This document shows, one piece after another, positions 7,826-43,749 of a DNA stretch of 64,000 bases. The position numbers and the translations under genes are program-made. Each line of letters begins with the position of its first letter. Within the stretch, counting starts at the first letter, position 1. The stretch spans positions 62,001 to 126,000 of IMG/VR virus record IMGVR_UViG_3300033153_007973. One strand, 5' to 3'. The notes below the pieces were generated by a model. It was not told where the DNA came from, did not search any database, and was given only the letters and a program-made list of their open reading frames with translations.

Positions 7826-8083
7826 ATGTCACGATCATATAAGAAGAATCCAGGCTACATAGATGGTCCACATGGTGATCATAAACGGTGGGCAAACAAG
7901 GTGGTGCGTAGAACAAAAGATGTCCCAGATGGTTGTCTATATAAGAAACATTATCCACAGTGGGACATCTGCGACTTCAAGTGTATCTACTATAGTAACA
8001 AAGAATGGTTGCGTTACTCCGCTCCAAATAGGACAGAGTTTGGATCAGAATATGACGAACCATATAGAGCAAGAATGAAATAG
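7826..8083 (+). CDS. basic hypothetical protein (MSRSYKK...ANKxVR...WDICD type)
   Basis: AAGGAGG SD; pattern recalled from phage hypothetical proteins. Confidence 0.8.
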   Translation: MSRSYKKNPGYIDGPHGDHKRWANKVVRRTKDVPDGCLYKKHYPQWDICDFKCIYYSNKEWLRYSAPNRTEFGSEYDEPYRARMK

Positions 8084-12117: not shown

Positions 12118-13002
12118 ATGCCAATTTCAGACATGGTAAGTGATATCCTGAATAAACGAATGACGAGAGCAGCGAACCAGAAGAAAGCCAGGACAAAAGC
12201 CAAGGAAGATGCACCAAATGACAAAGCAACAGTTCGTCAGGATTTCGAAGATATAGCAAAAGAAGATATCAAAGTAACTGAGAAACCTGAATCACCAAAA
12301 CCCACACAGAAAACAGATTCTGAAGAGACAGTCCCTGCAGTTCCTCAGGTGGGCATTCCTGATTCTAATGCTGCTATGTTCGTGCAGAGATTCCTAGCTA
12401 ACGTGTCAGATTCCAGTTTAGAACTAACAAAACAACAACTTGCAGATCTGGAGCATGATATCAAGAATCTCAACGTATCAGCCAGTACAACGATTCTCAG
12501 ATGCAAGGGAGCAGAAGATTGTGTGTATGGCAAATTCTGTTCACTGGATAAGATCAAGGGCACATTCCCGATTGGTGAGATCTGTCCTATGGAGAAAACC
12601 ATTGCTGAGATATCATTTAATGAATATCTAGTGTCTCTGAATAAGACAATGGATGATGTTGGTATCATAGAATTTAATCAGATCATGAGTCTTATAGAAT
12701 GTGATCTCCTGGATATGCGATCCAGGAGTCGTCTGAATGAAGAAGGTATGACGAGAATGGTTACGACATTTGTGAATCATAAGACAGGCGACACAGCAGA
12801 GACAGAAGAGCTATCTGTTATGTTTGGGATCAAGGATAGGGTAGCAAAGCGCAGGGACACAATCCTGAAACAGATGTTGGCTACACCAGAGATCAGAGCC
12901 AAATACAAGATAGCAGATGTTGGTGACAGAGGCCGCAAAGATGCTCGCCAGCTTGTGAAGGAAGCAAGAGAGAAACTCATTGAATTGAAACAGGATAAAT
13001 AA
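12118..13002 (+). CDS. probable terminase small subunit
   Basis: helical core ending QMLATPEIRAKY resembles P27-type LGLTPxxRxK; four-Cys cluster; upstream of TerL. Confidence 0.5.
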   Translation: MPISDMVSDILNKRMTRAANQKKARTKAKEDAPNDKATVRQDFEDIAKEDIKVTEKPESPKPTQKTDSEETVPAVPQVGIPDSNAAMFVQRFLANVSDSSLELTKQQLADLEHDIKNLNVSASTTILRCKGAEDCVYGKFCSLDKIKGTFPIGEICPMEKTIAEISFNEYLVSLNKTMDDVGIIEFNQIMSLIECDLLDMRSRSRLNEEGMTRMVTTFVNHKTGDTAETEELSVMFGIKDRVAKRRDTILKQMLATPEIRAKYKIADVGDRGRKDARQLVKEAREKLIELKQDK

Positions 13003-16000
13003 TGCCCCCTCGAGTTAATAGAAGTAGCCCCAAAGAAAAGCGAACTTTAGCCAACCTGTTCTTTGGTCTAGGAAAGAGAGTTCGAATAGAAGGAAAGAAT
13101 GGAAAGCCAGCTCGCTATATAACAAGAACAGCTGAGAATGAATGGCGAGATGAGCTTTCATATAGACCAGTACCAATCGAAGAAATTGCCGATGACCTCC
13201 TTAAACCATCTACCCGATTAGTAACTGAGAGAGATCTCCTTGAATTCAAGACATTAGCACGAACTAGGAATACACATCGCAGAAAGGTCTTTATTGACAC
13301 AGAGACCAGGATCAAGTCAAATACAGGTAGACTAGTCAAAGAAGACACACTCCAGGTTGCATTTAAGATAAAAGGTGAGAATAAGGGACATAGTCTTATA
13401 TTCAGTGATATAGCAAAACAACATAAAACATTACAGGGTGCGCCATCTGATCCAATACATGATATGCCAAAGGCACTTGATCAACAATATGAACAGATGG
13501 ATAAGTTCTATACGCCTCATGGAAGATCTGAGTTCATGGTTGATGATAATGCACTTGGCATCAAGATGCATGTTAATATGATCAATCGTTCGGAATATGT
13601 TGGCAAGAGCAAACGCATATTTGATCCAACGAAACATCAAGGCATGGCATATAATTCATCATTCGATGAAGCTAGAATTAACGCAATGAGTGGTCCAGAG
13701 AACCAGATACAACTGGATGATTTAAGAGGATTTGCTTCAATCTCATATGCTCGACACATGCCAGAAGTAGATGAAGTATATATGAAGGCATTGACTACCA
13801 ATTTCAAACCGCTACTGAAGAAGATGAATATTACAGACGATGCAACTGCTCTCATTGTTGATAATGCAAGACATGGATTAGGTAGTCAATACACATCAGC
13901 AACAGCACTCGAAGATCTTCATTATATTAATCAAGGAACACTTGGTCCCCATGCACAGAAGCTAAAGACAGGGAGACTCAATGACGATTTCACCACACAG
14001 ACTCATGAAGGTGTTGGTGATAATATTCTTGCTGAGAATGCTTATAGTGATACCAAGCAACTTAATGAGATGATGCGTCGTGAGAAAATGGGGCTATTCG
14101 GTCATGATCCAAATCGAAGATATTTTAGTACTGCGGATAGACGAGCATATTTTTGGATGCGACAGGCATATGCTAGAGAAGCCGTTGCTAATCCTAATTC
14201 AGTATGGCAAACAGTCGCTGAATTCAATAAGGCATGGGATAGAGCAGCAGGTAAAGATGGCGATCCTGTCATGGTCGCTAGACGTATAAAAGCTAATCTC
14301 GAGATAAAACAAGGCATTAAAATCGAGAAAGGCATATTCAAAGGAACTAAGGGATCATTGGGAGGACCAGGAACAGTCGGCGCACTTCTTGGCGGAGCAG
14401 CACTTTCTGCTGGTGTTAAATGGGCTGTCACGAAAGCATCAATGCGAGCAGGTGAAGGACAAGATCAGGTTCCAGAGGGACTCGGTCATAACTCACTAAT
14501 GACAGTTGCTCGTCGTCTGGCACTAACAGATTTTCACTCATCATGGTCAAGTGGTATATCACAGGCCGCTGGTGCTTTCGTAAAGATTATAGGTGGTTCG
14601 ATGAGGATGATGAAAAATAGTCCAACTGGTAAAGCAGTCGGTGAAGCATTCTCAGCAATCTTAGGATCTCCAAAGTATCAAGGTAGTGGTGATATTACAA
14701 AAGGTGCAGTAAAGAGTTGGTTCGGTGGTGGCGGTGGAACAAAACATATGCAAACTATCATGTCTAAGATACAATGTGCTCTTGGTAAAATGGCTACCAG
14801 TGCTTCAGAGAATGTTCATCTAACTGATAAAGCTCGTGAGAATGTTAGTGGTTTCTTTCAAAAAGCAGCAGAGAAGGTAGCGGAATTGGGAACTTCTGTA
14901 CCGACCGATAAGTCACTTCTAACAGAAGGTACAGTCAAGTTTAAGAAAACACTTAGTGACTTGTTCGCAATGAGAGGTGGAAAACTACCACCACATGCCA
15001 TAGCAGCAATGGCAGGCATTGGTGGTGCAGTACTTCTAGGTGTTACTACTGGAAAATATGATCCAGATAAAGCTCCGGAAGTACCGGAGACACTTGATAA
15101 GAACAAAGTTAGAAATCCTCAGAGACATAGACGAACACCAGGAAGTCTGTGGCAACGCTTGAATGATCTTAGATCTACTCAAGATGAAGGCATTCGATAT
15201 GGTTCTCCAACAAGACAACAACAAAGATACTCAAAGACAGACTTTGGATCTGGCATGCGCCCTCGCAGAACTCTAGATGAGATGATAACAGGAGGTTCAT
15301 TTCCAACAGTACAGAAAAGTGTCATTGATGGAGCACATGGTGTTCATGGTGTTGAAACTGCTCGTACAAATAGAAGAAATGTTAATCTGGATCGGGCTAA
15401 CATTCAATCATCTACAGTACAATTAAAGAGCGGAAAGTCATTACAGATCAGTGGAAAGCTATCAGAAGCAATTAACAGTCTAGAAGATGGAAAGAGCATG
15501 TTAGCTAGCGAAGCGATTAGTGAATCACTAGAAAATAGAAAAGAGGAAACTGCAACTAAGTTAGCACTCGTAAGATCTAAATCCTCACACAGTGAAGCTA
15601 GAAAGATGAAAATGTATACATCTCAATATAGACCTCATCAGCTACCGGACGAAAGCATGGCACATAAGTCAATGAAACGACAGCTTGTTGGTGAAGGACC
15701 AGGCCCATTTTATCGAGGCAAAGACCTATATGGTGGAAGTCTTTCTGGAATTGATGGTAGGATGAGAAGACAAGTCAGCCATAATCCATATAATGCGACT
15801 GCTCGCGGATATGAGCAAATCATTCCAAATGAAGAAGGAATGGTTAATAGACAAACAACAAAGCTAGATGACAGCATTAGTTCAGCAAGTATCGTTCCTC
15901 GTCGTATTATTGATACTGGAAATAAGGGAATGGAATCGGCAGATGCAAATCAATATTATACCAGGAGAAATGTTAGTAGAAATTCTTCTGAATCCGACGC

Positions 16001-16304
16001 ACTAGATGCATCAGATAGCCGAGATTATCTTAAGCCGCTGAGAAATGCCAATCGCATACAAGGAGAAGTACAATCAGAAATAAACCAAGGTAGTATTAAT
16101 AATGCAGTCATGATGAATCAAGGTGGATATCCTGATAGGATTATAGCAATGAGCCTAGATAATAAAGGTCTGCAAGATGCCGGTGTAAATATGCATATTA
16201 ATCGTCAGGAGATGAGTGGTCATCGCATCCCAGGATGGGCAAGCAGTGGATCAAAAACGTTCAATAATGATTCAAACATACATACCACAGAGAATGTCAC
16301 ATAG
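13002..16304 (+). CDS. DEDDh 3'-5' exonuclease domain fused to Gly/Ala-rich putative internal virion protein
   Basis: IDTET, AYNSSFD, THEGVGD; hydrophobic segments; repeated EG..TDF motif. Confidence 0.65.
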   Translation: MPPRVNRSSPKEKRTLANLFFGLGKRVRIEGKNGKPARYITRTAENEWRDELSYRPVPIEEIADDLLKPSTRLVTERDLLEFKTLARTRNTHRRKVFIDTETRIKSNTGRLVKEDTLQVAFKIKGENKGHSLIFSDIAKQHKTLQGAPSDPIHDMPKALDQQYEQMDKFYTPHGRSEFMVDDNALGIKMHVNMINRSEYVGKSKRIFDPTKHQGMAYNSSFDEARINAMSGPENQIQLDDLRGFASISYARHMPEVDEVYMKALTTNFKPLLKKMNITDDATALIVDNARHGLGSQYTSATALEDLHYINQGTLGPHAQKLKTGRLNDDFTTQTHEGVGDNILAENAYSDTKQLNEMMRREKMGLFGHDPNRRYFSTADRRAYFWMRQAYAREAVANPNSVWQTVAEFNKAWDRAAGKDGDPVMVARRIKANLEIKQGIKIEKGIFKGTKGSLGGPGTVGALLGGAALSAGVKWAVTKASMRAGEGQDQVPEGLGHNSLMTVARRLALTDFHSSWSSGISQAAGAFVKIIGGSMRMMKNSPTGKAVGEAFSAILGSPKYQGSGDITKGAVKSWFGGGGGTKHMQTIMSKIQCALGKMATSASENVHLTDKARENVSGFFQKAAEKVAELGTSVPTDKSLLTEGTVKFKKTLSDLFAMRGGKLPPHAIAAMAGIGGAVLLGVTTGKYDPDKAPEVPETLDKNKVRNPQRHRRTPGSLWQRLNDLRSTQDEGIRYGSPTRQQQRYSKTDFGSGMRPRRTLDEMITGGSFPTVQKSVIDGAHGVHGVETARTNRRNVNLDRANIQSSTVQLKSGKSLQISGKLSEAINSLEDGKSMLASEAISESLENRKEETATKLALVRSKSSHSEARKMKMYTSQYRPHQLPDESMAHKSMKRQLVGEGPGPFYRGKDLYGGSLSGIDGRMRRQVSHNPYNATARGYEQIIPNEEGMVNRQTTKLDDSISSASIVPRRIIDTGNKGMESADANQYYTRRNVSRNSSESDALDASDSRDYLKPLRNANRIQGEVQSEINQGSINNAVMMNQGGYPDRIIAMSLDNKGLQDAGVNMHINRQEMSGHRIPGWASSGSKTFNNDSNIHTTENVT

Positions 16305-16305
16305 G

Positions 16306-16334
16306 TTGACATTCTCCGCACTAGATGATATAAT
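16306..16334 (+). promoter_or_regulatory. sigma70-type promoter, extended -10
   Basis: TTGACA-17-TATAAT with TGn. Confidence 0.85.
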
Positions 16335-16352: not shown

Positions 16353-16661
16353 ATGTCAGCATTCGCGCGCTCAGGACAAATTGTAAAGGGTATTGTTAGA
16401 TCGGGTCTGTTTAGAGGGGTTAAGAATCTAGCACATCCTACAAAACTTGTAGGCACATATGCACATGATGCCAAAAGAATAGCACAAGGTATCACTGCTG
16501 GTAATATACAGTCCACAGCAAGAAGATCTGCTCTAATGCTAGGTACAACAATTGGACTGGGATATACAGCAAGAGCAGTTCGTGGTGCTGCTGGTGGTAG
16601 CGGAGTATTCAAAAATAGAAAAGGTAAGCGAGATATGATACCATTTGTACCATTTATATAG
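16353..16661 (+). CDS. small basic Gly/Ala-rich putative virion protein
   Basis: GGAGG SD; one hydrophobic segment. Confidence 0.75.
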   Translation: MSAFARSGQIVKGIVRSGLFRGVKNLAHPTKLVGTYAHDAKRIAQGITAGNIQSTARRSALMLGTTIGLGYTARAVRGAAGGSGVFKNRKGKRDMIPFVPFI

Positions 16662-16672
16662 AGGGGTGACAC

Positions 16673-17044
16673 ATGGCTACAGTTAATACTGCGATAAATG
16701 CAGCAAGAGCACTTGCCAGTAAAGGTGCAAAGAAGGTTGGTGTTAATTATTTCCAGGCCGGTGGTGTTTTCAAGAGTGGTGGTAACTTTCTTAAGAGTGC
16801 ATTTGCTAAGGGCGGAAACATAAGAGAAACAGTCGGTCTCGCAGCATCGGGTGCACTTGTTATGAGAGGAATCACAGGTGCAGCATCTGGATCATATAAG
16901 ACACTGCGAAACACAGGTTTGATTAATCCATTACTTGGAGGCAGACGAGTTCATCACGGATATGGAAAACGAGGAATAGACTCTAATAATCAACAAACTG
17001 ATGGACTTGTTCAGTCACTTCATAGAAATAGAAGACAAAGGTAG
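16673..17044 (+). CDS. small basic Gly/Ala-rich putative virion protein
   Basis: SD; C-terminal DGLVQSLHRNRR. Confidence 0.75.
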   Translation: MATVNTAINAARALASKGAKKVGVNYFQAGGVFKSGGNFLKSAFAKGGNIRETVGLAASGALVMRGITGAASGSYKTLRNTGLINPLLGGRRVHHGYGKRGIDSNNQQTDGLVQSLHRNRRQR

Positions 17045-17049
17045 GTAGC

Positions 17050-18651
17050 ATGCCTCCACAGCCAGTACCGAGTCAAGGCGAACCATTTGCCACTCAACCT
17101 GAAATTGAAAGTCCTATAGCTAGAGCACGTAATTTCGCTAGTGGCTATAATCCAATGAAGCACCCATTAAGAACTCTCATGCGGTTGGGTGTTGCTTCCA
17201 CATTCATACCTGGAGCACCAAAGCTCTGGAATATTCCAACACAAGGTACCAATCTTAATTCTTTTAGCTTCTTTGGTTTTAGATCACTTCTAACAGGAAC
17301 TGCTAGCATAGGACAAGGAAGATTATATGGAGCAGCAGCTGGTAGTCTTCTTGGTGGTGTACCTGGAGCAGTAATGGGTGCTCTTTCTGGTGGCGGACTA
17401 GCAAGAGACAAGAAGGGCGCTGGTGGTTTAACTAAGTTACTTGGGAAAGGTACAACGATAGGTGGATTTGGACAAACGGCATTCAATACAAGTACAGACT
17501 TCATGCATTCAATGTTTGCTGGTGGGATACCAGAAGGAACATCGGCTGCTAGTAAAGCAGCAACAGGATTCGCCGAACGAACCATTGGTAAACCAATCCC
17601 ACTATATTCAGAGCTATGGCAAAATAGATACTACAAAAGGACAGTAACCGCACCATATGCTATTGCTAAAAATGTTCCTGAAAATGTGATTCGTGCATCG
17701 GGTGAATTAGCAAGTCAAACAATAGGGGCCAAACCCGGCGGTTTCGTCTATGAAGAAGCAACAACAGCAACATTAGCACAACAAAAGTCACGAGTAAAAC
17801 AACAAGTTAAAGCGCGAGCCCGTAGTCGTGGCCGTAAACGAGTATCCAAGAAAATAAGAAGAGGTTTCAGGAAAGAGTCGGCTGCATATAGAAGATTATT
17901 CGATGTCGATAAAATAATAGAAGGTTCTCATAAAGCGTACTTCGCGTCAGCTGAACAATCATATAAAAGTGTATATAGTGCTATGAGAGGCATCACCAAA
18001 CAATCATCAGCATTATCATTAAAGATGAGCATGTTTGGAGAATATTCTCCATTCTTCGCACGAGGTCGAGAAGCGATGGACAAGACGATGCTGGGTTTAT
18101 ATACTGGCCCAGAAGCAATGAAAGCTGGAAATGCGGCATGGATAGCCAAAAGAAATGCAACAGCATATCAAGCAATGAAAACATCAACCAAAGTAGGTGC
18201 AACAGCAGTGCAACAAGCAAAAGCTGGAGGGGAACTTGCAAAGTTCATTAACCCAAAGACAGGGAAAGTATTTGAGAGCGCCACTGTTGCGGGGTTATCG
18301 CCAGAGCAAATAACAGGTGAGGTTGGATTAGGCGCCAAGGCAGGTCTTAAGTCATCAGCTAGAAAACAAATAGCAAGCGCTACTCGCTCTATGATCAAAG
18401 TTGCAATTGCTGCAAAGGTGATCAGAGGCGTCGGAAGAATTGCAGGCGGAGCAGTTAGAGGGGCAATATCTACATTAGAAACAGGATCAGCAATAGCCAG
18501 ACAAATCGGAAAGGCTGAGTTCGGTTCCGGCCGAGCACTTGTCACCAAACAAGCATCAACAGAACGCAGTCGTGCAATTATGGCAATTCAAAATTCAGGT
18601 ATTAATGCGCGCCAATATCTTGGACGCGAAGCACTAATGTATGCGGAGTAA
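17050..18651 (+). CDS. basic Ala/Gly-rich putative internal virion protein
   Basis: glycine-zipper segments; C-terminal TERSRAIMAIQNSGINARQYLGREA. Confidence 0.7.
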   Translation: MPPQPVPSQGEPFATQPEIESPIARARNFASGYNPMKHPLRTLMRLGVASTFIPGAPKLWNIPTQGTNLNSFSFFGFRSLLTGTASIGQGRLYGAAAGSLLGGVPGAVMGALSGGGLARDKKGAGGLTKLLGKGTTIGGFGQTAFNTSTDFMHSMFAGGIPEGTSAASKAATGFAERTIGKPIPLYSELWQNRYYKRTVTAPYAIAKNVPENVIRASGELASQTIGAKPGGFVYEEATTATLAQQKSRVKQQVKARARSRGRKRVSKKIRRGFRKESAAYRRLFDVDKIIEGSHKAYFASAEQSYKSVYSAMRGITKQSSALSLKMSMFGEYSPFFARGREAMDKTMLGLYTGPEAMKAGNAAWIAKRNATAYQAMKTSTKVGATAVQQAKAGGELAKFINPKTGKVFESATVAGLSPEQITGEVGLGAKAGLKSSARKQIASATRSMIKVAIAAKVIRGVGRIAGGAVRGAISTLETGSAIARQIGKAEFGSGRALVTKQASTERSRAIMAIQNSGINARQYLGREALMYAE

Positions 18652-18653
18652 AT

Positions 18654-20444
18654 ATGCCAGATGATCAGAAACAATACGAAAAGAATAACTTCGATAACAT
18701 AGATCAGAGAGACCATTTTACTGAAGAAGAGTTAGAGTGTCTTCGTATTTCTGATGATGTTAGTGATGAAGAATATCTTATAGCAACATGGATTACTTAC
18801 CCTTCAATATGGGCAGAAGAGTTCTGTGCAAATCCTAGAGACGCACAGCAACGAATAGAAATCAGACCATATCAAGCCGCCATCATGAATGATCCTGGTC
18901 GAAGAAAGATCTTGAGACTGGGGCGCCAGATCGGTAAGAGTATGAGTATTGGTATTCTTGCTGTCTGGGAAGCATATCTATTTGGTCAAAGTAAGATCCT
19001 AGTCGTCTGTCCTCGACAGACACACGTTAATAATATCTTTAAGGAAATCAGGTACTTCGTCGATCATGATGAACGACTAAAGAACGAAGTAATCGGGATA
19101 ACGAAGCAACCGCATGAGATCACATTTAGAAACGGATCCTATATTAGGGGACTGACAGCCGGCACCGCGGCAGCTGGTATTCGTGGACAGGTCGCGAATA
19201 CTTTATTCGTCGATGAGGCGGATTATGTACCTGAGGCTGCTGTTGAGGCCATTGATCCGGTCGTTAGTTCATTCAAACATCCAAACATCTGGCTTTCTTC
19301 AACACCATCAGGATTGCGCAAGGCGTTCTATAATAAGTACTACTCCAAGGAATATAAACCATTCCATTTTCCATCATGTGTTAGTCCAGACTGGACAGCA
19401 CAGAAGGAAGCACAATACAGAGCCAGCTATAGTATCGCAGGATACACACATGAGTTTGATGCAGAATGGGGAACAGCTGAGAGCAGCGTGTTCCCACGCT
19501 GGGCAATTGAACAGATCAAATCTAACTCCATCATTATACCGACCGAAGACTCTTCAACCAGACAATATACATATAGCGATGCCGAAGCACTCCATGCAAC
19601 TAATAAATTCAAATGGACCATCATTGGAATCGACTGGAATAAAGCCAAGAATGGTACCAGGTTTGTCATCTGTGGAGTAGATGATAAATACAGAGTTAGT
19701 GTCATAAAGAAGGAGAAGATCGACGCAACTGAGTTCACACAAGTCAAAGCAGTGAACAGAATACTCGAACTTAATAAGATCTATAATCCAAACTATATTG
19801 CCGTGGATGTTGGTTATGGTAGCATGCAGATCGAGTATCTCCGACTGATAGGCAAAAAGTATCCAGAAACTGGTCTGGATGAAAAGCTAATTGGAATTGA
19901 GACAGGTGGCTCCATCGATATTAAAGATATCGTTACTGGCGAGGATAGAAATACATTCGTTAAACCGTTCATGGTAGAGAACATGGCAAGGTTCGTAGAA
20001 CGAGGACTAATCCAATTTCCAGAAGAAGAGAATCTGACAACAGATACTGGATCAGCAGTCGGCGTGATGACACTATCTGACCAGCTTCTAAACTATGAGA
20101 TCGACTATTATACTAGCACCGATAGACCAGTATATAAGGGTACAGAGGATCATGACCTGGATGCATTTATGTTCTGTGTCTATGCTGTTGTTGTTCATAT
20201 TCTCAAATCAACAAATCTATATGACTCTCTCCCAATGGTACAGCCAATGCGTCTTAATGGCAATACACTACTAAAGTCTCTAGTAGGTCACACTGGTGAA
20301 AAGAAAGACGGAAACCAGGGACCCAATGTTGATACTCTTCCAACAAGGCAGATCTTTGGTGGCAAAAAGAATAGGAATAAACCAGCATCAATCTCTAGAT
20401 CGATAGGATTCTCGAGCAGATCAAGATCAGGGAGAGGACTATAA
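18654..20444 (+). CDS. terL: terminase large subunit
   Basis: Walker A GRQIGKS, Walker B LFVDEAD, coupling SSTP, nuclease IGIDWN...DHDLDA. Confidence 0.96.
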   Translation: MPDDQKQYEKNNFDNIDQRDHFTEEELECLRISDDVSDEEYLIATWITYPSIWAEEFCANPRDAQQRIEIRPYQAAIMNDPGRRKILRLGRQIGKSMSIGILAVWEAYLFGQSKILVVCPRQTHVNNIFKEIRYFVDHDERLKNEVIGITKQPHEITFRNGSYIRGLTAGTAAAGIRGQVANTLFVDEADYVPEAAVEAIDPVVSSFKHPNIWLSSTPSGLRKAFYNKYYSKEYKPFHFPSCVSPDWTAQKEAQYRASYSIAGYTHEFDAEWGTAESSVFPRWAIEQIKSNSIIIPTEDSSTRQYTYSDAEALHATNKFKWTIIGIDWNKAKNGTRFVICGVDDKYRVSVIKKEKIDATEFTQVKAVNRILELNKIYNPNYIAVDVGYGSMQIEYLRLIGKKYPETGLDEKLIGIETGGSIDIKDIVTGEDRNTFVKPFMVENMARFVERGLIQFPEEENLTTDTGSAVGVMTLSDQLLNYEIDYYTSTDRPVYKGTEDHDLDAFMFCVYAVVVHILKSTNLYDSLPMVQPMRLNGNTLLKSLVGHTGEKKDGNQGPNVDTLPTRQIFGGKKNRNKPASISRSIGFSSRSRSGRGL

Positions 20445-20445
20445 G

Positions 20446-22719
20446 ATGCCAGATAATATAACAAGAGAAGATTATGATAGTACATCATATCGTCCTCGTG
20501 CTACATCCCAGACAGCACGAGCAGATCGTGAAGCTGTAATAACTAAAGTCAAGAACGTAAGATTAGATAACCCACCAAAAGCAATGCCAGAATTTCCAGC
20601 TATTGATTTCAACAATGCTGAGGAAGTAACACCTGCACAAGCAAGAGAATTAATCAATAGGACACAAGATGAGTTGCAGAGTGTGGATGCTCGAATCAGT
20701 GCTGCAGAAGACATCCTTTATTCCAGCAATTCAATGCTTGGACATTATTCAAATGAAGAATATCCGCGACTGAATCGAGCGATGCGAGATCTTCTTGGAG
20801 TAGGTGACCTTGTACAAGAGGATGGATTTGATCTCACACCAGAAACACTTGCATGTATCAATAAAATCGCAACATATTCAGAACCCGCACCCACACAAGC
20901 GGAACTGCAAGATCCAGATGCTCTAACTGAAAAGATTGAAAAGAATTTCCCTACCAAAGAGCAACTTTGGCCAGGCCTTCTCTATCGCCTATTCTTCATG
21001 TTCTTTACTCTTACTGTGAAATATATCTTTACATCATTGTGTAAGATGTCGAGAGTGTTACCGGATGAGATTATTGGAATTGATGTCGGAATAGCAATAA
21101 GAAAGATGTTCAAGAAAGCTGCAAATTATCTCTTCTATATCATCAATAATCTGTCAGCAAAGGTAAATCCTAAGATTATAGGTGTGAAATCATATCATTC
21201 ATTTCAAGCATATCTCAAAGAGAAGAGTGTCGATGTATGTTCAAAACAATCGATGGATGAACTAGAAGATCCAGATACAATGAGCAGTGTGGTTGATCAA
21301 TATACTATTCAGGAAGAAGGGTGTAAGCAATGCAACGAGGGATGCAAACCTACCCCAGAACAACCGGGCCTTGCAAAACAAGCCATTAAGGAATTATTAA
21401 TAGCTCAAATAAAGAACAAGTCAAACACAAAGACAGACATATCATCAACCCTTATTCTAGAACAACTAAAGAATCAGAGTAAGAATATAAAAGAATCTCT
21501 AACTGGATATGAAATTGCTATCGAGGATAAACCATCTGGAGAAGCAAGCGTTCTTGGAACAGTTCGAGGTACCATTCTTGGTCATCTTATTATGATTGAA
21601 GAGCTTGTGCGCGGAATGGATATCACTGTATCCAGAGTCATTAATCTAGAATTCATTTCTCCCGCGGCTAAGGACTTTGTGTGTTGTTTCGTCAGACTAA
21701 TATTCTTTGCGTTTGCTGATGCTGATAAATTGGGTAGCGATGTAACCGAGTTCCTAAAGGATGGTCTTGATTCCAAGAACATTAACAAGAAACTCCAACC
21801 AAATAAGCAGACTATTGCTATTCTCAAGATGCTCGATAGTGTTCTCTCATATATGATGGGACAGGCACAATATAATATGCTCATCCAGCTACCAATCGAT
21901 TCTGAATTCATCATGGGTGCTATGAAACAAGCACTTGCAGAAACGTTAACTATGTTTAATGAGACAATTAGCTTTCCCATCAATGTTGCATTTACAAAGA
22001 TGTTTGAAATCCCAAGCTTTAAGGTTGCTGCTGAGTTGTGTGTTCCATTCTCATACGTTGCAAATCTAGCCACTTGTGGCTTTCAGATGTTGCAAAATAA
22101 GATATACGAACTCATTGCAAAGCTCTGGATGGAGGGAAACGAGACAATGAAATCATTTGATTCGTTCCTTACATTGTCACTGAGAGTCAAGAATCTGAAG
22201 ATCTTCTCATCCCTAATCAACTTTGTACTAGACAATACAGCAGCACTCCAGCAGTTCTGTGATGTGGATAAGCTAACCACACCAGAAGAGATAGAAAGAA
22301 TTAAGACAATGTTGGAGAATGAAATTCCTGTTACTGTATATGACGATCGCGTTCCGGTGCCAGATGATAATAATTCAGATGCAGCAAAGAAGACTAAAAT
22401 ACTGATGACTCCTATATTTAAAGCAGATGATCCGATTGGCCCAGATGATAATGACTTTATCAATAGTCAATATGGGAGAGGATTGGCTGGAGAATTTGGT
22501 GAACTAGACATGGAACTATCTCCTATGTATGTAGAGCCAGAGGAATTAGAGAAGAAATGGGCAATAGAAGTACCCATTAAAGACTCAAAGACAATCACTC
22601 TCAGAGCAGCTATTGGCTGTGGTAATGACTTTAAGGAAATTCTTGCAGAATCAGCATCAGCAATGAAAGAACTAAAAGACGAGAATGTTATAAGCCATCT
22701 AAAGCTGCGAAACCAGTAG
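20446..22719 (+). CDS. large helical hypothetical protein between TerL and portal
   Basis: 757-aa ORF. Confidence 0.75.
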   Translation: MPDNITREDYDSTSYRPRATSQTARADREAVITKVKNVRLDNPPKAMPEFPAIDFNNAEEVTPAQARELINRTQDELQSVDARISAAEDILYSSNSMLGHYSNEEYPRLNRAMRDLLGVGDLVQEDGFDLTPETLACINKIATYSEPAPTQAELQDPDALTEKIEKNFPTKEQLWPGLLYRLFFMFFTLTVKYIFTSLCKMSRVLPDEIIGIDVGIAIRKMFKKAANYLFYIINNLSAKVNPKIIGVKSYHSFQAYLKEKSVDVCSKQSMDELEDPDTMSSVVDQYTIQEEGCKQCNEGCKPTPEQPGLAKQAIKELLIAQIKNKSNTKTDISSTLILEQLKNQSKNIKESLTGYEIAIEDKPSGEASVLGTVRGTILGHLIMIEELVRGMDITVSRVINLEFISPAAKDFVCCFVRLIFFAFADADKLGSDVTEFLKDGLDSKNINKKLQPNKQTIAILKMLDSVLSYMMGQAQYNMLIQLPIDSEFIMGAMKQALAETLTMFNETISFPINVAFTKMFEIPSFKVAAELCVPFSYVANLATCGFQMLQNKIYELIAKLWMEGNETMKSFDSFLTLSLRVKNLKIFSSLINFVLDNTAALQQFCDVDKLTTPEEIERIKTMLENEIPVTVYDDRVPVPDDNNSDAAKKTKILMTPIFKADDPIGPDDNDFINSQYGRGLAGEFGELDMELSPMYVEPEELEKKWAIEVPIKDSKTITLRAAIGCGNDFKEILAESASAMKELKDENVISHLKLRNQ

Positions 22720-22781: not shown

Positions 22782-24452
22782 TTGATGAATCCTTTTAAAT
22801 TTGCTTTCAATAAAGATTACCGCCGCCAAGCTATAATTAACTGGGCATATGATGATGTTAAAGGCGCTGTTTCTGACAATAGGCGCACTAGAGCATTGGA
22901 TGCGCAGCGCATACGGAATCTGCCCACAGAGGTATCGATTGGTCGTTTCACAAAGATCAATATTCCACAAAGGTCTGATCTTGCCGGCCGAGTCTTCATT
23001 AATAATTATTTCTTTGATGATCTAGATAAGGCATATCAGGGCGAGACATATGTCAAGTATGCAGTTGATCGATATGTCGAGAGTGTCCTCAGAAATGGCT
23101 GGAGCATTGTTAGTGGGAATGCAAAAGTTGTTGGGTATCTTGAGAAGCGCTTTCATGAAATGGCAATCGCATCATCAACCACCATGGAGGAAATGTTCAG
23201 TGATTTCCTCTCAACAACAATACTATACGGAAACGCATTTCTAATCAAATACAGAAATGCGAAGTCATCTAGTGGCAAACCTGTTACTAGATCTGATGGT
23301 AGAACCATTCCTCCGATTGCTTCTTTGTTCATCGAAGATACAAGGAAAATGCATATAGCAATGACCGGAGCTAACAGATATATCTATATCAGAACACCAC
23401 AGAATATAACTGGACGCACTCCCAATACACTGAATACATACGCATTCCCATTTGGACTTAATGCATTCTCTTCATATACTGGCTACCCAAAATCACATAC
23501 TCCGCCAGCAATAATCAGTGGTCAGATTGCTCAAGCAATCTCTGCTGGTAGATCTGGCAGAATCGGTGATATCAGAATCTACAGAGATCTTGATGTCGCT
23601 CACATCAGATATCATCATGTGCCTGGAGAGAAATGGGCAATGCCTCCGTTCTGGCCGGTCCTTCCCGATGTTGATACTCTACGAAGAATCGAAGAAAATG
23701 TTGAATTGCTCATGTATCAATATGGTCACAGTCTTCTGCATGCTGCCATTGGAAGTGATCAGCGTCCTGGGTCCAAAGCAGACGTAGCCACTATCACCCA
23801 GAAGATGAAAGACATGGAAGGAAATGGATTTATCGCAACGGACCATCGTGTGAATCTAGAATTTAAAGGCGCGGAAGGGAAAGCAATTCGTGCAGAAGAA
23901 TACCTGAAATACTTTAAGGCAAGAGCATTCTCTGGACTCTGGCTCAGTTCAACGACAGTTGGTGAAGGCGATAGTGCTAACCGAGCAACTGCAGAGACGG
24001 TTGATATGATTCGCCAAGACAAGACGATCGAACTCCAGAGAATTCTGCAGAAAGAGCTTCAGCCTATTCTGATCGAACTCCTACTCGAAGCAGGTGTAGA
24101 TTATGGCTGGGCACTACAGCCAGAGAATATTCCGGCAATACACTTCCCAGAAGTAGACGTTAATAAGAAGATCGCACTGGAAAGTCATATCCTGAATCTG
24201 TATAACTCGAATGTAATCACGGAGACAGAGGCTAGAGTGCTGCTCGGTATGAAGCCTCTGGATGAGAAGGAACGAAGTGGACTATTCGTATATGCGGTTT
24301 CCTCAGTCGCTAGTCTCCTGAAGCTGGGTATGGAACCTGTAGCAAAATTTGCAATGCAGAGAATTGGTGGGGCAAATGCATCGACCAAATCAATCGTAAA
24401 GCCTACGAATCAGAGCGGGCAGAAGACAGGCCCTTCACAGGCAAAGAATTAG
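22782..24452 (+). CDS. portal protein
   Basis: YGNAFL, VAHIRY, GEGDSANRATA, ITETEARVLLG; synteny. Confidence 0.9.
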   Translation: MMNPFKFAFNKDYRRQAIINWAYDDVKGAVSDNRRTRALDAQRIRNLPTEVSIGRFTKINIPQRSDLAGRVFINNYFFDDLDKAYQGETYVKYAVDRYVESVLRNGWSIVSGNAKVVGYLEKRFHEMAIASSTTMEEMFSDFLSTTILYGNAFLIKYRNAKSSSGKPVTRSDGRTIPPIASLFIEDTRKMHIAMTGANRYIYIRTPQNITGRTPNTLNTYAFPFGLNAFSSYTGYPKSHTPPAIISGQIAQAISAGRSGRIGDIRIYRDLDVAHIRYHHVPGEKWAMPPFWPVLPDVDTLRRIEENVELLMYQYGHSLLHAAIGSDQRPGSKADVATITQKMKDMEGNGFIATDHRVNLEFKGAEGKAIRAEEYLKYFKARAFSGLWLSSTTVGEGDSANRATAETVDMIRQDKTIELQRILQKELQPILIELLLEAGVDYGWALQPENIPAIHFPEVDVNKKIALESHILNLYNSNVITETEARVLLGMKPLDEKERSGLFVYAVSSVASLLKLGMEPVAKFAMQRIGGANASTKSIVKPTNQSGQKTGPSQAKN

Positions 24453-27709: not shown

Positions 27710-29005
27710 ATGAAAGACCTTCTAAAAGCATACAGCGATCCCAAAGTTCTAGAGGTAGCGGATGCAGTTCGTTCGATCCTCTATACTGATGGGGCAATGA
27801 TCACCGAGAATGATGAGACAAAAACGCCAGAACTTTCGAGCCTGCAACTGAAAGACCTTCTGACAAGTGCGGATATTATCCCATTACTGCCGGAAGCGAT
27901 CACTCACGTGATCCTGGAGGAAATCGAACCCGCCTCCATCATATACAACACGTTCTTCAATGAAGTGCGTGCAATCAGAAGTGGCACATTCGTGATCCAC
28001 TCAATCGGACCGATGGTTGCTCTTCCCGTCGGCGCCAATGGCGAATACCCTGAAACAAGCTTCGCCCTGGACGCAACGGGTCATCGGATCAACATCAACA
28101 CCCAGAAGTATGGCCTTGAGATCAACATCGCGGACGAAGTCCTCGAAGACAATCTCATCGGCGTGGTGGGGATGTGGCTCCGCAGAGCTGCTAACGCTCT
28201 GGTTCGGAACAGAGAAAAGATGGCTATTGATATGATCAAGAAATACGGGATCATAATGATGGACAACAATTCTCCTTCCGCTCCTGTGAAAAACCTCTCT
28301 GGACGTGACATCACTGGTACCCAAAATGGTACCATGACGATGAACGACCTGATGGAACTCTACACGAGTGCCCTGATGGAAGGTTTCACTCTGGATACAA
28401 TGATCATGCACCCCCTTGCATGGCAGACTTTCATGACGGATGCAGAGATGAAGGAAATCGTCCTGAATAACAACACCCTGGTGACCTATCGGCCACCTCG
28501 GGGTTCCTATTCAAGGGCACTCCAGCAACTTGCACATCCTGAGAATCTTGGATTGACATGGAACAAGGGCTACGGTAATCCAACTCTTGATCCTACAACC
28601 AACAAGCTCGGAAAGAACCCATACGCATCGACTCTGTCGGTGATGAATGCAACTTTCAATCTTCCACCTCGGAGTGTTCTCCCAACTCCGCTCCAGATTA
28701 TCGTATCTCCTTATGCTCCAATCAGTACGGTTAATAACCGCACGATCACAGACATTATCTTCGCCGAATCTAGCGAAGTAGGTCTGGCGCTGCGTAAGAC
28801 AGATCCGATTACGGAACGGTTTGAGAATCCTGAAAAGGAAAGAGTGAAGATTCGAATGAAAGAAACATTCGGAATGGGAATTCTGAACCAGGGGAAAGCC
28901 ATCAGAATCGCAAAGAACGTTGTGGTCGACAGAAATTACGTGTTCGATAATGTGAACAGCGTGACGAATATGGCCAACCTCAACCGTTACTCCGATCTGG
29001 TGTAA
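27710..29005 (+). CDS. major capsid protein (HK97 fold)
   Basis: VGANGEYPE, KYGLEINIADEVLED, MIMHPLAW, IRMKETFGMGILN. Confidence 0.92.
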   Translation: MKDLLKAYSDPKVLEVADAVRSILYTDGAMITENDETKTPELSSLQLKDLLTSADIIPLLPEAITHVILEEIEPASIIYNTFFNEVRAIRSGTFVIHSIGPMVALPVGANGEYPETSFALDATGHRININTQKYGLEINIADEVLEDNLIGVVGMWLRRAANALVRNREKMAIDMIKKYGIIMMDNNSPSAPVKNLSGRDITGTQNGTMTMNDLMELYTSALMEGFTLDTMIMHPLAWQTFMTDAEMKEIVLNNNTLVTYRPPRGSYSRALQQLAHPENLGLTWNKGYGNPTLDPTTNKLGKNPYASTLSVMNATFNLPPRSVLPTPLQIIVSPYAPISTVNNRTITDIIFAESSEVGLALRKTDPITERFENPEKERVKIRMKETFGMGILNQGKAIRIAKNVVVDRNYVFDNVNSVTNMANLNRYSDLV

Positions 29006-42828: not shown

Positions 42829-43749
42829 ATGATAGACAAACAGAAACTAGACAAGTGGAGACGCAGATACGGCATAATCTCCGCATTGTCCACTAAGAAC
42901 GGGGATGAATATGTCCTCCGCGGTCTTCAGTTTGAGGAGATGCATAGATGGTCTTCCTTTATTACCGTATCTAAAGGTACTTCAGATACGTATGATATTG
43001 ATGATCAGATTATCGAAGATGTCCTTTCTGCATGTATCCTTCATCCTGAAGAACCAAACATATCTCTAATCATGGAAAAAGCAGGGCTTGTTGTCGAAAT
43101 GTGTAACCGCATTATGAGTGTAACACAATTCGAGAACATGGACTTTCTGATTAATTGTTATATAGATAAACTTAGATCAGCCAATATGGTATATGGAGTC
43201 ATCCGTATGCGATTGGTTGCTCTCTACGGAGTAGCAGTTCTAGAAAAGCTCAGAGATCTAAAGGCAGAAGAAATTATCGAGCTTTTAGTATATGGTGAAT
43301 ACTCCACAGAGAGTATCGGACAGTTCTCTGAGATTATTAACAAGCCAGAGATCCTTCCTAGAGATAGAAAGGGCAAGATCATAGAGAAAGAGATGATGAA
43401 TCTTCTCTTTGGAAAGGACAAACCAAACACTCCTGCACAGAACAAAAGGGAGAAGACACCACATAAACCAAAGACAATCGATGATCTTCAATCGATGATG
43501 GATAAATCACAACAAGCAAATAGAGGACCATCTGAAGAAGAGCTTCAAACAATGGATAGTAAGACACATGCACAGATGAAGAAAGACGGAAAGATACCAG
43601 ATTTCCAACAAGAAGTTAAGGGATCAATGAATGATGCAACATCAGCACTTCAGAAGAAGATTGAAGAAGATAAAGCCAAGTTTGGCACAGGTGCTGCGGA
43701 CAGAACGGGTGGATTTAGAGGAAACATACAGGATCTAATTAATAAATAA
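42829..43749 (+). CDS. putative tail assembly chaperone paralog with C-terminal extension
   Basis: N-terminal ~105 aa resemble the preceding ORF. Confidence 0.6.
   Translation: MIDKQKLDKWRRRYGIISALSTKNGDEYVLRGLQFEEMHRWSSFITVSKGTSDTYDIDDQIIEDVLSACILHPEEPNISLIMEKAGLVVEMCNRIMSVTQFENMDFLINCYIDKLRSANMVYGVIRMRLVALYGVAVLEKLRDLKAEEIIELLVYGEYSTESIGQFSEIINKPEILPRDRKGKIIEKEMMNLLFGKDKPNTPAQNKREKTPHKPKTIDDLQSMMDKSQQANRGPSEEELQTMDSKTHAQMKKDGKIPDFQQEVKGSMNDATSALQKKIEEDKAKFGTGAADRTGGFRGNIQDLINK

What the first reader, a model, noticed from the sequence alone, without database searches (positions are those of the whole stretch)
13280..14060. Complete DEDDh exonuclease motif set inside a putative internal virion protein
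Seen: ExoI IDTET (13296), ExoII YNSSFD, ExoIII HEGVGD (14004-14021), followed by two hydrophobic Gly/Ala segments and a polar tail, between putative TerS and TerL. Inference: an ejected, possibly membrane-tethered 3'-5' exonuclease acting early in infection.
Basis: partly seen in the sequence, partly recalled or inferred. Interest (0 to 1): 0.6.

Follow-up and report, generated by a model that had tools for sequence, protein, structure and literature searches.

The report
Divergent exonuclease in phage head cassette
A 1100-residue protein of an uncultured 234-kb jumbo phage carries a very divergent but strictly conserved DEDDh 3'-5' exonuclease motif set, followed by two hydrophobic segments, and its gene lies among genes whose counterparts in a distant relative are virion proteins, so it may be a nuclease delivered with the phage DNA, though this is unproven.

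Summary
ORF 13002..16304 (+, 1100 aa) contains FIDTET (aa 97-102), YNSSFD (217-222) and HEGVGD (335-340) at the stated coordinates. Two Gly/Ala-rich hydrophobic segments and a polar tail follow.

Pfam, PHROGs, NCBIfam, PDB sequences and cultured phages give no match, and AlphaFold2 could not fold the domain (pLDDT 36-43). I found nine metagenomic homologues (median 17% identity in this region). The ExoII acid is D in six sequences and E in two.

A profile-profile comparison with a DEDDh reference aligns all three motifs in register. Its score of 22.8 exceeds 200 shuffles (maximum 16.2) and 10 unrelated-profile controls. A protein-language-model neighbour search returns only 3'-5' exonuclease (PF01612) clusters. 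I rate an active DEDDh-type site at about 0.8.

"Internal virion protein" remains an inference, at about 0.5. The gene sits in a conserved cassette: gp112-like putative TerS, this gene, three small Gly/Ala-rich proteins, then TerL. In Bacillus phage 0305phi8-36, cassette genes gp113, gp114 and gp116 are virion proteins by mass spectrometry, but that phage has no counterpart of this gene. Verdict: a new variant of a known kind, of moderate interest.

The parts
13002..16304 (+). ORF of 1100 aa (P0001), the protein in question. Its start overlaps the stop codon of the upstream gene by one base.
   Evidence: Homologues of 772-1231 aa with the same architecture occur in nine metagenomic or viral contigs.
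13029..13265 (+). Small N-terminal beta-rich domain (aa 10-88), the only confidently modelled part.
   Evidence: AlphaFold2 pLDDT about 76-84. Only weak (Z about 4) resemblance to SH3/Tudor/PWWP-like barrels.
13275..14096 (+). Putative DEDDh (DnaQ-like) 3'-5' exonuclease domain, aa about 92-365. Inter-motif spacings are 118-120 residues, longer than in the E. coli DEDDh domains aligned here.
13290..13307 (+). ExoI motif FIDTET (D99, E101).
   Evidence: D and E are invariant in 8/8 homologues that have an N-terminus. The next residue is T in 7 and S in 1.
13650..13667 (+). ExoII motif YNSSFD (N218, D222).
   Evidence: N is invariant in 8/8. The acidic position is D in 6 and E in 2.
13713..13730 (+). 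Family-specific invariant motif LDDLRG (D240, R242), not part of the three DEDDh motifs tested here.
14004..14021 (+). ExoIII motif HEGVGD (H335, D340), H-x4-D.
   Evidence: Invariant in 10/10 homologues. It is the best local hhalign match onto ExoIII of KapD-like exonucleases.
14361..14429 (+). Hydrophobic Gly/Ala-rich segment 1 (GGPGTVGALLGGAALSAGVKWAV).
   Evidence: KD 1.1-1.3. Conserved in all homologues; G455, L463 and G465 are invariant.
14523..14543 (+). First copy of the repeated motif R..L.(T)DFGSG (here LTDFHSS).
14994..15068 (+). Hydrophobic Gly/Ala-rich segment 2 (HAIAAMAGIGGAVLLGVTTG) followed by the conserved KYDPD.
   Evidence: KD 1.5-1.7; conserved.
15234..15254 (+). Second copy of the motif (KTDFGSG).
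15255..16304 (+). Polar, poorly conserved tail. RIPGW (16224-16238) aligns with the near-C-terminal (L/I/M)P(F/Y)(I/V)P peptide of the homologues.
12118..13002 (+). Upstream 294-aa protein with four invariant Cys, a homologue of 0305phi8-36 gp112 and a putative small terminase.
   Evidence: HMM against gp112 4e-12, Edson 1.5e-17, ME3 gp009 5e-17. Weak TerS PHROG hits for one member. Invariant Cys.
16306..16334 (+). Perfect sigma-70 consensus promoter (TTGACA-17-TGnTATAAT) just after the ORF's stop codon. It starts a separate transcription unit for the next genes.
   Evidence: nine such sites in the genome, about 0.08 expected.
16353..16661 (+). 102-aa Gly/Ala-rich protein ending ...KRDMIPFVPFI. 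Probable counterpart of 0305phi8-36 gp113, a virion protein by MS.
   Evidence: blastp E 0.015; HMM E 0.012, C-terminus aligned to C-terminus.
16673..17044 (+). 123-aa Gly/Ala-rich protein with the conserved C-terminus YGKRGIDxNNxxTDGLVQSLHRNRR. It was used as an anchor to find more loci.
17050..18651 (+). 533-aa Gly/Ala-rich protein. Its C-terminal EFGSGR...TERSRA motif matches the 170-aa protein just upstream of TerL in Bacillus phage Edson.
   Evidence: E 7.3e-6
18654..20444 (+). Large terminase.
   Evidence: phrog_2 4.6e-38, PF03237. It is 25-32% identical to TerL of Moorella phage MTATph1 and Bacillus phage 0305phi8-36.

Best explanation
The ORF encodes a large late protein of an uncultured jumbo myophage distantly related to Bacillus phage 0305phi8-36. 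It has five parts. (1) A small beta-rich N-terminal domain. (2) A highly divergent DnaQ-like DEDDh 3'-5' exonuclease domain, in which D99/E101 (ExoI), N218/D222 (ExoII) and H335/D340 (ExoIII) would bind two metal ions and a general base to remove nucleotides from free 3' ends. (3) Two modules, each made of a moderately hydrophobic Gly/Ala-rich helix followed by an R..TDFGSG motif. (4) A long polar tail. (5) A short C-terminal peptide of the (L/I)PF(I/V)P type. What is shown: the gene and its family are real, the DEDDh residues are the most conserved positions of the N-terminal half, the architecture is conserved, and the gene lies in a conserved head/packaging cassette. What is inferred: the protein is packed into the capsid with the neighbouring small Gly/Ala-rich proteins and leaves with the DNA. 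The hydrophobic segments, too weakly hydrophobic for constitutive membrane proteins, would then insert into the host membrane on ejection. This would place the exonuclease domain at the DNA entry site early in infection, where it could trim 3' ends of phage, host or competitor nucleic acid.
For: Real gene family: the exhaustive phmmer search found 4 relatives. An anchor search with the conserved downstream gene found 4 more.

Active site:
- Of 368 alignable N-terminal columns only 12 are invariant, and they include D99, E101, N218, H335 and D340. The hypergeometric P for 5 of the 6 motif positions is 8.5e-8. Median pairwise identity in this region is 17%.
- hhalign against a broad DEDDh reference (E. 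coli dnaQ, orn, sbcB, rnt, exoX plus KapD-like sequences) scores 22.8 (P 0.026). At low MAC threshold ExoI, ExoII and ExoIII align in register.
- 200 column shuffles give a mean of 11.3 and a maximum of 16.2. Ten unrelated real-profile controls score 10.3-16.7.
- The ESM Atlas feature search of aa 85-365 among named clusters returns PF01612 3'-5' exonuclease clusters at the top (0.87, 0.85, 0.85), and all ten best family-bearing hits share that family or clan.

Virion context:
- The same gene order occurs in L005, L006, L007 and L008.
- The upstream gene is a clear homologue of 0305phi8-36 gp112 (4e-12).
- In that phage gp113, gp114 and gp116, which lie between gp112 and TerL, are annotated as virion proteins by mass spectrometry.
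- The 102-aa neighbour matches the gp113 C-terminus (E 0.012-0.015).
- Its C-terminal ..IPFVPFI peptide recurs at the C-termini of P0001-family members: GLPFIPQV, PIPFVPSYR, MPYIPLV.
- Portal, protease/scaffold, capsid and sheath genes follow on the same strand.
Against: Against the exonuclease assignment:
- No curated model reaches the protein: Pfam, PHROGs and NCBIfam at E up to 10, and PF00929/PF01612 searched directly on the genome.
- hhalign probability is only about 2%.
- Both AlphaFold2 models are unusable in the domain (pLDDT 36-43), so the RNase H-like fold is unverified.
- Inter-motif spacings (118-120 aa) are longer than in the E. coli DEDDh domains aligned.
- The ExoII acid is Glu in two homologues.

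Against virion delivery:
- 0305phi8-36, Edson and ME3 have the cassette but no counterpart of this gene, so the MS evidence is for neighbours, not for this protein.
- A perfect promoter at 16306 places this gene in a different transcription unit from those neighbours.
- The phage has a contractile tail (sheath gene). From my own knowledge, membrane-inserting ejection proteins are best documented in short-tailed phages.
Confidence: 0.5

Rival explanations
1. An active DEDDh exonuclease that is not packaged. It would be a late, cell-internal protein, possibly membrane-anchored by its hydrophobic segments. It would work with the adjacent putative small terminase in maturing or protecting concatemer or terminal-repeat ends, degrade host DNA for nucleotide supply, or exclude superinfecting DNA.
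For: Its start overlaps the stop of the gp112-like putative TerS gene, and it shares that transcription unit rather than the unit of the small virion-type proteins. The genome ends in direct terminal repeats, whose formation needs end processing. The cultured relatives with MS data lack this gene.
Against: The protein shares the Gly/Ala-rich hydrophobic module, the (D/E)FG(S/T)G motif and a C-terminal peptide with the neighbouring cassette proteins. At least one of those neighbours corresponds to an MS-verified virion protein. From my own knowledge, no terminase system needs a 1100-aa partner bearing membrane segments. The genome already has a canonical soluble DEDDh exonuclease elsewhere.
Confidence: 0.27
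2. Not an exonuclease. The conserved D/E/N/H/D residues would serve another function, such as a metal site of a different fold or a structural or protein-binding role. In that case the protein is a purely structural or scaffolding internal protein.
For: No curated HMM and no structure prediction supports the fold. The profile-profile P-value is only 0.026. Two homologues have Glu at the ExoII acid. Additional invariant residues (D240, R242, P254) lie outside the three DEDDh motifs tested.
Against: All three motifs occur in the canonical order, with the flanking pattern seen in the E. coli DEDDh domains aligned: a hydrophobic strand before D-x-E-T, a second hydrophobic strand of the (D)I(Y/F)x(L/V/M)(G/A) type 15-20 residues later, and H-x4-D. 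They are the most conserved positions in the region, align in register with five E. coli DEDDh enzymes, and score above all controls. The language-model neighbours are all 3'-5' exonuclease clusters.
Confidence: 0.15
3. The motif set is a chance coincidence in one long protein.
For: A loose version of the pattern occurs in 9% of shuffles of this protein and in 8 ORFs of the genome.
Against: The strict pattern occurs in 0.4% of shuffles. The motif residues are invariant in 8-10 homologues that share about 17% identity.
Confidence: 0.02

Closest known systems
DEDDh (DnaQ-like) 3'-5' exonucleases: Pfam RNase_T PF00929 and its clan, e.g. E. coli DnaQ epsilon, RNase T, ExoX, Orn, ExoI, KapD/ERI-1-like
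   Same: The three motifs occur in the same order: D-x-E-T, N-x3-4-D and H-x4-D. Each is preceded by hydrophobic strand-like segments. They align in register with five E. coli enzymes and with the phage's own KapD-like exonuclease.
   Different: It falls below every curated family threshold. Inter-motif spacings are about 30-60 residues longer. Two homologues have Glu at ExoII. The family has extra invariant residues (LxDxRG, P254). The domain is fused to an N-terminal beta domain and about 730 residues of hydrophobic and polar sequence. Fold and activity are unverified.
Bacillus phage 0305phi8-36 cassette gp112-gp116 upstream of TerL gp117 (gp113, gp114 and gp116 are virion proteins by mass spectrometry, per the GenBank record)
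   Same: The gene order is the same: gp112-like protein, small Gly/Ala-rich proteins, TerL, portal, protease/scaffold, capsid. gp112 homology is clear (4e-12). The gp113 C-terminus resembles that of the 102-aa neighbour.
   Different: 0305phi8-36, Edson and ME3 have no gene corresponding to the 1100-aa protein. It is an insertion specific to the metagenomic clade.
Ejection (internal virion) proteins with an enzymatic N-terminal domain, e.g. T7 gp16, ejected with gp14 and gp15 (PMC8605104 for the ejectosome; the gp16 N-terminal transglycosylase domain is from my own knowledge)
   Same: The proposed logic is shared: a large head-packaged protein carrying an enzyme domain plus segments that engage the host envelope during DNA delivery.
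   Different: There is no sequence relationship, the enzyme is different, the phage is a myovirus rather than a podovirus, and packaging is unproven here.
Phage polyvalent proteins and MuF-fused effectors delivered with the DNA (Iyer et al. 2017, PMC5512222; also discussed in PMC7824862)
   Same: The concept is shared: large enzymes encoded near portal and terminase genes that are packaged and injected to act early.
   Different: Only one enzymatic domain is detectable, and no MuF domain or other hallmark polyvalent-protein domain was found. A term search of that paper found no mention of 'DEDD' and only one reference-list mention of 'exonuclease'.

Membership tests
DEDDh / DnaQ-like 3'-5' exonuclease superfamily | ExoI motif D-x-E on the first strand | tested here: met
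   FIDTET, aa 97-102. D and E are invariant in 8/8 homologues with an N-terminus.
DEDDh / DnaQ-like 3'-5' exonuclease superfamily | ExoII motif N-x2-3-(aromatic/aliphatic)-D | tested here: met
   YNSSFD, aa 217-222. N is invariant in 8/8. The acid is D in 6 and E in 2 homologues, at N+4 or N+5.
DEDDh / DnaQ-like 3'-5' exonuclease superfamily | ExoIII motif H-x4-D (the 'h' subtype) | tested here: met
   HEGVGD, aa 335-340. H and D are invariant in 10/10.
DEDDh / DnaQ-like 3'-5' exonuclease superfamily | Score above the curated threshold of a family model (PF00929, PF01612 or related) | tested here: not met
   There is no hit even at E up to 10 for the whole protein, for the domain alone, or for any homologue. 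A direct search of the genome with PF00929 finds only the separate canonical gene. PF01612 finds nothing.
DEDDh / DnaQ-like 3'-5' exonuclease superfamily | Profile-profile similarity to the family with motifs in register | tested here: inconclusive
   hhalign score 22.8, P 0.026, probability about 2%. All three motifs are in register at low MAC threshold. The score is above 200 shuffles (maximum 16.2) and 10 unrelated controls (maximum 16.7).
DEDDh / DnaQ-like 3'-5' exonuclease superfamily | RNase H-like alpha/beta fold with the five residues clustered | tested here: inconclusive
Two AlphaFold2 jobs with a 6-sequence alignment gave pLDDT 43 and 36, with the domain unmodelled.
DEDDh / DnaQ-like 3'-5' exonuclease superfamily | Metal-dependent 3'-5' exonuclease activity | not testable with these tools
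   Needs a biochemical assay.
Phage internal virion / ejection proteins | Physical presence in purified virions | not testable with these tools
   No cultured member exists. There are no hits in 50,697 phage records.
Phage internal virion / ejection proteins | Encoded within the head/packaging gene module | tested here: met
   The gene lies between the gp112-like gene and TerL. Portal, protease, capsid and sheath genes are downstream on the same strand. The order is conserved in four other contigs.
Phage internal virion / ejection proteins | Homology to a protein shown to be in virions | tested here: not met
   P0001 itself has no detectable homologue in 0305phi8-36, Edson or ME3. Only its neighbours do: the 102-aa protein against gp113 (E 0.012) and the 533-aa C-terminus against the Edson 170-aa protein (7.3e-6).
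Polyvalent proteins / MuF-fused effectors (PMC5512222) | Two or more effector-type domains in one polypeptide, or a MuF head-attachment domain | tested here: not met
   Pfam finds no MuF domain or other domain in P0001 or its homologues. Only one putative enzymatic domain is present.

The most novel reading that the evidence does not exclude
This is a capsid-packaged DEDDh exonuclease. It would be ejected with the genome together with three small Gly/Ala-rich proteins. Its glycine-zipper-like segments would insert into the host membrane and hold a 3'-5' exonuclease at the DNA entry portal. There it could resect the direct terminal repeats for circularisation or concatemer formation, or destroy host or competitor nucleic acids before any phage gene is expressed. 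I know of no phage enzyme described as delivered in this way.
Probability: 0.3. Interest if true: 0.7.

Novelty: new variant of a known kind. Interest (0 to 1): 0.5.

Why it matters
If the domain is active, it extends the DEDDh superfamily to a lineage that current family models do not detect. It also gives jumbo-phage annotators a testable function for a large 'hypothetical' gene in the head module. If the protein is also packaged and ejected, it would be an example of a nuclease delivered with the phage genome, which bears on how large phages prepare genome ends or disarm the host in the first seconds of infection. More broadly, the conserved cassette of Gly/Ala-rich proteins upstream of TerL is shared with 0305phi8-36-like phages, where members are virion proteins. 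It would then be a candidate DNA-delivery apparatus for this old myovirus lineage.

Tried and rejected
- Family scans of the whole protein, the domain alone and all homologues against Pfam, PHROGs and NCBIfam found nothing relevant.
- PDB sequence searches with the single sequence and with a profile gave only noise: eL38, and the RSV F fusion-peptide region at E 0.12.
- tblastn of P0001 and of the 533-aa neighbour against 50,697 phage records gave no match.
- The word-index search with the protein and with the alignment returned only the query itself. The candidate lists were cut at 8000, and I suspect the Gly/Ala-rich words filled them.
- The first metagenome scan with the family alignment found nothing. 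The anchor-gene strategy then worked.
- AlphaFold2 on aa 1-470 and on aa 87-365 gave pLDDT 43 and 36, with the domain unmodelled. Both jobs are used, so the later 10-sequence alignment could not be folded.
- hhalign against a narrow KapD-like reference was not significant overall (P 0.067-0.076), although the local hits fell on the cognate motifs. The -glob mode was useless.
- hmmsearch of the KapD-like HMM against the family gave only a marginal ExoI hit in P0003.
- The Thomas et al. 2007 proteomics paper (PMC2171028) is not held, so the virion status of gp113, gp114 and gp116 rests on the GenBank annotation.
- Homology of the 123-aa protein to gp114 was seen by eye but is not supported by an HMM.
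- The chance-motif reading was rejected.
- Not used: the read-mapping tools, any alternative genetic code, and complex prediction (no binding claim is made).
Full report
**Setting.** The window is bases 62001-126000 of a 234,008-bp IMG/VR virus record with direct terminal repeats, rated 100% complete. Genes in the region are almost all on the + strand. Downstream of the finding lie TerL (18654..20444; phrog_2 4.6e-38), a portal (22782..24452), a protease/scaffold-like gene, a major capsid protein (27710..29005), an Ig-like decoration protein and a tail sheath (32452..34893). TerL and portal are 25-32% identical to those of Bacillus phage 0305phi8-36, Bacillus phages Edson and WH1, Moorella phage MTATph1 and Acinetobacter phage ME3. 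The virus is therefore an uncultured jumbo myophage distantly related to the 0305phi8-36 lineage.

**Observation.**
- The finding lies in one ORF, 13002..16304 (+), of 1100 aa (P0001).
- Two Gly/Ala-rich hydrophobic segments follow at aa 454-476 and 665-684. Their Kyte-Doolittle 19-residue means are 1.1-1.3 and 1.5-1.7. A Ser/Gly/Asn/Arg-rich tail comes after them.
- The strict three-motif pattern occurs in 0.4% of shuffles of the protein, and a loose version in 9%.

**No known family reaches it.**
- Pfam, PHROGs and NCBIfam give nothing for the protein, for the isolated domain or for any homologue, even at E up to 10.
- Searching the genome directly with PF00929 finds only a separate, canonical KapD-like DEDDh exonuclease at genome 29692-30216 (2.1e-12). 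PF01612 finds nothing.
- PDB sequences and 50,697 phage records give no match.

**A family exists.**
- The exhaustive phmmer search with aa 1-470 found four relatives: P0002-P0005, with E from 4e-27 to 3e-4. A viral-contig scan added P0006.
- The downstream 123-aa gene has a much better conserved C-terminus (YGKRGIDxNNxxTDGL..NRR). I used it as an anchor and recovered four more homologues from the flanks: L020:5032-8649, L013:3455-7000, L015:376-2691 and L014:1-2259.
- That makes ten sequences in all, eight of them with an N-terminus. Median pairwise identity in the exonuclease region is 17%, with a range of 12-34%.

**Conservation test.** In the alignment, 368 columns of aa 1-470 can be evaluated and only 12 are invariant: D99, E101, G186, N218, D240, R242, P254, H335, D340, G455, L463 and G465.
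- Five of the six residues that define ExoI (D, E), ExoII (N, D) and ExoIII (H, D) are among these 12.
- The sixth, D222, is Asp in six sequences and Glu in two.
- The hypergeometric probability of five or more of six chosen positions falling among 12 of 368 columns is 8.5e-8.
- The local context also fits. A hydrophobic run precedes D-x-E-T. A second strand-like segment of the type DI(Y/F)x(L/V/M)(G/A) follows 15-20 residues later, as in the '..IIEIG..' strand of the E. coli DEDDh enzymes aligned. ExoIII reads H-(A/G)-(A/G)-x-x-D in several members.

**Profile comparisons.**
- Against 120 KapD-like sequences, collected with the phage's own canonical exonuclease, hhalign is not significant overall (P 0.067-0.076). 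However, its best local alignment puts ExoIII on ExoIII. Separate blocks land on their cognate motifs: ExoI P 0.042, ExoIII P 0.011, and ExoII nearby at P 0.23.
- I then built a broader reference from E. coli dnaQ, orn, sbcB, rnt and exoX plus 20 KapD-like sequences. The 10-sequence family profile scores 22.8 (P 0.026). At low MAC threshold all three motifs align in register.
- 200 column-shuffled versions of the query give a mean of 11.3, an SD of 1.5 and a maximum of 16.2. The reversed alignment gives 11.9.
- Ten comparisons between unrelated real profiles give 10.3-16.7.
- The signal is real but weak. I attribute the weakness to the long insertions between motifs and the extreme divergence.

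**Language-model neighbours.** The ESM Atlas feature search of aa 85-365 among named clusters returns PF01612 (3'-5' exonuclease, same clan) clusters at ranks 1-3, with scores 0.87, 0.85 and 0.85. All ten best family-bearing hits share that family or clan. By the tool's own calibration this is only a lead, but it points the same way.

**Structure.** Both AlphaFold2 jobs failed for the domain: pLDDT 43 for aa 1-470 and 36 for aa 87-365, each with six sequences in the alignment. Only aa 10-88 fold confidently, into a small beta-rich domain with weak (Z about 4) resemblance to SH3/Tudor/PWWP barrels. Weighing everything, I put the probability of a DnaQ-like active site at about 0.8.

**Rest of the protein.** All homologues share two modules. 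Each consists of a Gly/Ala-rich hydrophobic helix followed 30-60 residues later by R..x(T)DFGSG; in P0001 the motifs are LTDFHSS at aa 508-514 and KTDFGSG at aa 745-751. The 533-aa neighbour ends with a third version, EFG(S/T)GR...TERSRA. Several family members end in (L/I/M)P(F/Y)(I/V)P: GLPFIPQV*, PIPFVPSYR* and MPYIPLV... The same peptide ends the 102-aa neighbour (..KRDMIPFVPFI*) and its homologue in L008. The function of these motifs is unknown. Maturation cleavage sites or capsid/portal docking peptides are possibilities I could not test.

**Context and the virion claim.** The gene order is the same in L005, L006, L007 and L008:
1. a Cys-rich protein of about 290 aa
2. this protein
3. 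a protein of about 70-100 aa
4. a protein of about 90-120 aa
5. a protein of 460-660 aa
6. TerL

The Cys-rich protein is a clear homologue of 0305phi8-36 gp112 (4e-12), of an Edson protein (1.5e-17) and of the C-terminal half of ME3 gp009 (5e-17). One member has weak hits to three small-terminase PHROGs, with E from 0.003 to 0.03.

In 0305phi8-36 the genes between gp112 and TerL are gp113-gp116. The GenBank record marks gp113, gp114 and gp116 as virion proteins identified by mass spectrometry. The gp113 C-terminus (..GERDIAGIPFI*) matches the 102-aa neighbour (blastp E 0.015; HMM E 0.012, end to end). The C-terminal motif of the 533-aa protein matches the Edson protein just upstream of TerL (7.3e-6). 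The cassette as a whole therefore very likely encodes virion components.

None of the cultured relatives has a counterpart of the 1100-aa protein. It is an insertion between the gp112-like and gp113-like genes that is specific to the metagenomic clade.

A perfect TTGACA-17-TGnTATAAT promoter at 16306-16334 separates it transcriptionally from the downstream small proteins. The genome has nine such perfect sites, against about 0.08 expected by my own estimate, so they are real promoters.

Packaging of P0001 is therefore plausible, given the shared modules, the shared C-terminal peptide and its location, but it is unproven. I put it at about 0.5.

**Mechanism proposed.**
- Shown: a conserved DEDDh-type residue set, conserved moderately hydrophobic Gly/Ala segments, and residence in the head-module cassette.
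- Inferred: the protein is packed in the head with the small Gly/Ala-rich proteins and exits with the DNA. Its hydrophobic segments insert into the host membrane; segment 1 falls below, and segment 2 only just reaches, the 1.6 hydropathy cut-off commonly used for constitutive membrane helices (my own knowledge). The N-terminal exonuclease then acts on 3' ends near the entry site.
- Possible substrates are the phage's own terminal repeats, where resection would expose complementary strands, or host or competitor nucleic acids. The data do not discriminate between these.

**Rivals.** They are a non-packaged late exonuclease working with the terminase or on host DNA (0.27), a non-catalytic protein whose conserved residues serve another role (0.15), and chance (0.02).

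**Comparison with what is known.** The catalytic motifs match DEDDh enzymes, but the protein fails every curated family threshold, and its fold and activity are untested. I describe it as working like a DEDDh exonuclease and being a probable, very divergent member of that superfamily.
- The delivery idea resembles T7-type ejection proteins (PMC8605104). It also resembles the packaged 'polyvalent' or MuF-fused effectors described by Iyer et al. (PMC5512222; also PMC7824862).
- It has none of their defining domains. A term search of that survey found no mention of DEDD domains.
- Novelty: a new variant of a known kind.

Noticed in passing
window 58484..64000 and beyond (genome 120484-131871; L024): A 3795-aa ORF downstream of the tail genes begins with a PD-(D/E)XK nuclease domain (PF12705, 7.6e-10 to 2.1e-9) that ends in a Cys cluster (CTRCPAYQHC). 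The remaining roughly 3500 residues have no Pfam match. It is a second giant protein with an N-terminal nuclease in the structural region, and a possible packaged 'polyvalent'-type protein.
   Followed up: partly
window 4609, 16306, 22720 (and six more sites in the genome): There are nine perfect TTGACA-N16-18-TATAAT promoters in the 234-kb genome, against about 0.08 expected. At least those at 16306 and 22720 have an extended -10 TG. They sit in intergenic gaps before structural genes, which suggests that host sigma-70-type RNA polymerase transcribes the morphogenesis genes.
   Followed up: partly
window 43749..51461: The 2570-aa ORF contains an intein (LAGLIDADG_3 at 4.7e-10 above the Pfam cut-off, plus weaker Hint_2 and Hom_end hits below it) at about aa 1519-1877. 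The TerL homologue in the related contig L007 (8703-11813) also carries an intein (PF14890, PF14528).
   Followed up: no
window 12118..13002: The 294-aa protein has four invariant cysteines (C129, C135, C141, C156). It is homologous to 0305phi8-36 gp112, an Edson protein and the C-terminal half of ME3 gp009, which is annotated there as a methyltransferase. One member has weak hits to three small-terminase PHROGs. It is a candidate for the unidentified small terminase of this phage lineage.
   Followed up: partly
window 14523-14543, 15234-15254 and 18517-18534 (533-aa protein, aa 490-495): A motif R..x(T/A)(D/E)FG(S/T)G recurs twice in every member of the P0001 family and once at the C-terminus of the 533-aa family. 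Each copy lies 30-60 residues after a Gly/Ala-rich hydrophobic segment. It may be a maturation cleavage site or a docking element; its function is unknown.
   Followed up: partly
window 16626-16658 (C-terminus of the 102-aa protein); C-termini of P0003, P0005, P0006; 0305phi8-36 gp113: A shared near-C-terminal peptide (K/R)(D/N)(I/M)..(I/L)PF(I/V)P links the small cassette protein, the MS-verified virion protein gp113 and several members of the large exonuclease-like family. It could be a common capsid-targeting or docking signal.
   Followed up: partly
genome 29692-30216 (-), outside the window (L003:1483-2121): The phage also encodes a canonical, easily recognised DEDDh exonuclease of the KapD/ERI-1-like type (PF00929, 2.1e-12; thousands of relatives). 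The divergent domain in P0001 is therefore not the genome's only 3'-5' exonuclease.
   Followed up: yes
window 13029-13265: The N-terminal 80 residues of P0001 fold confidently (pLDDT about 80) into a small beta-rich domain with weak SH3/Tudor/PWWP-like matches (Z about 4). It is conserved in all full-length homologues and could be a nucleic-acid or protein-binding module.
   Followed up: partly
window 20446..22719: A 757-aa ORF between TerL and the portal has no Pfam or PHROG match. It occupies the position where 0305phi8-36 has gp118-gp121, which include the putative curly-fibre subunit.
   Followed up: no
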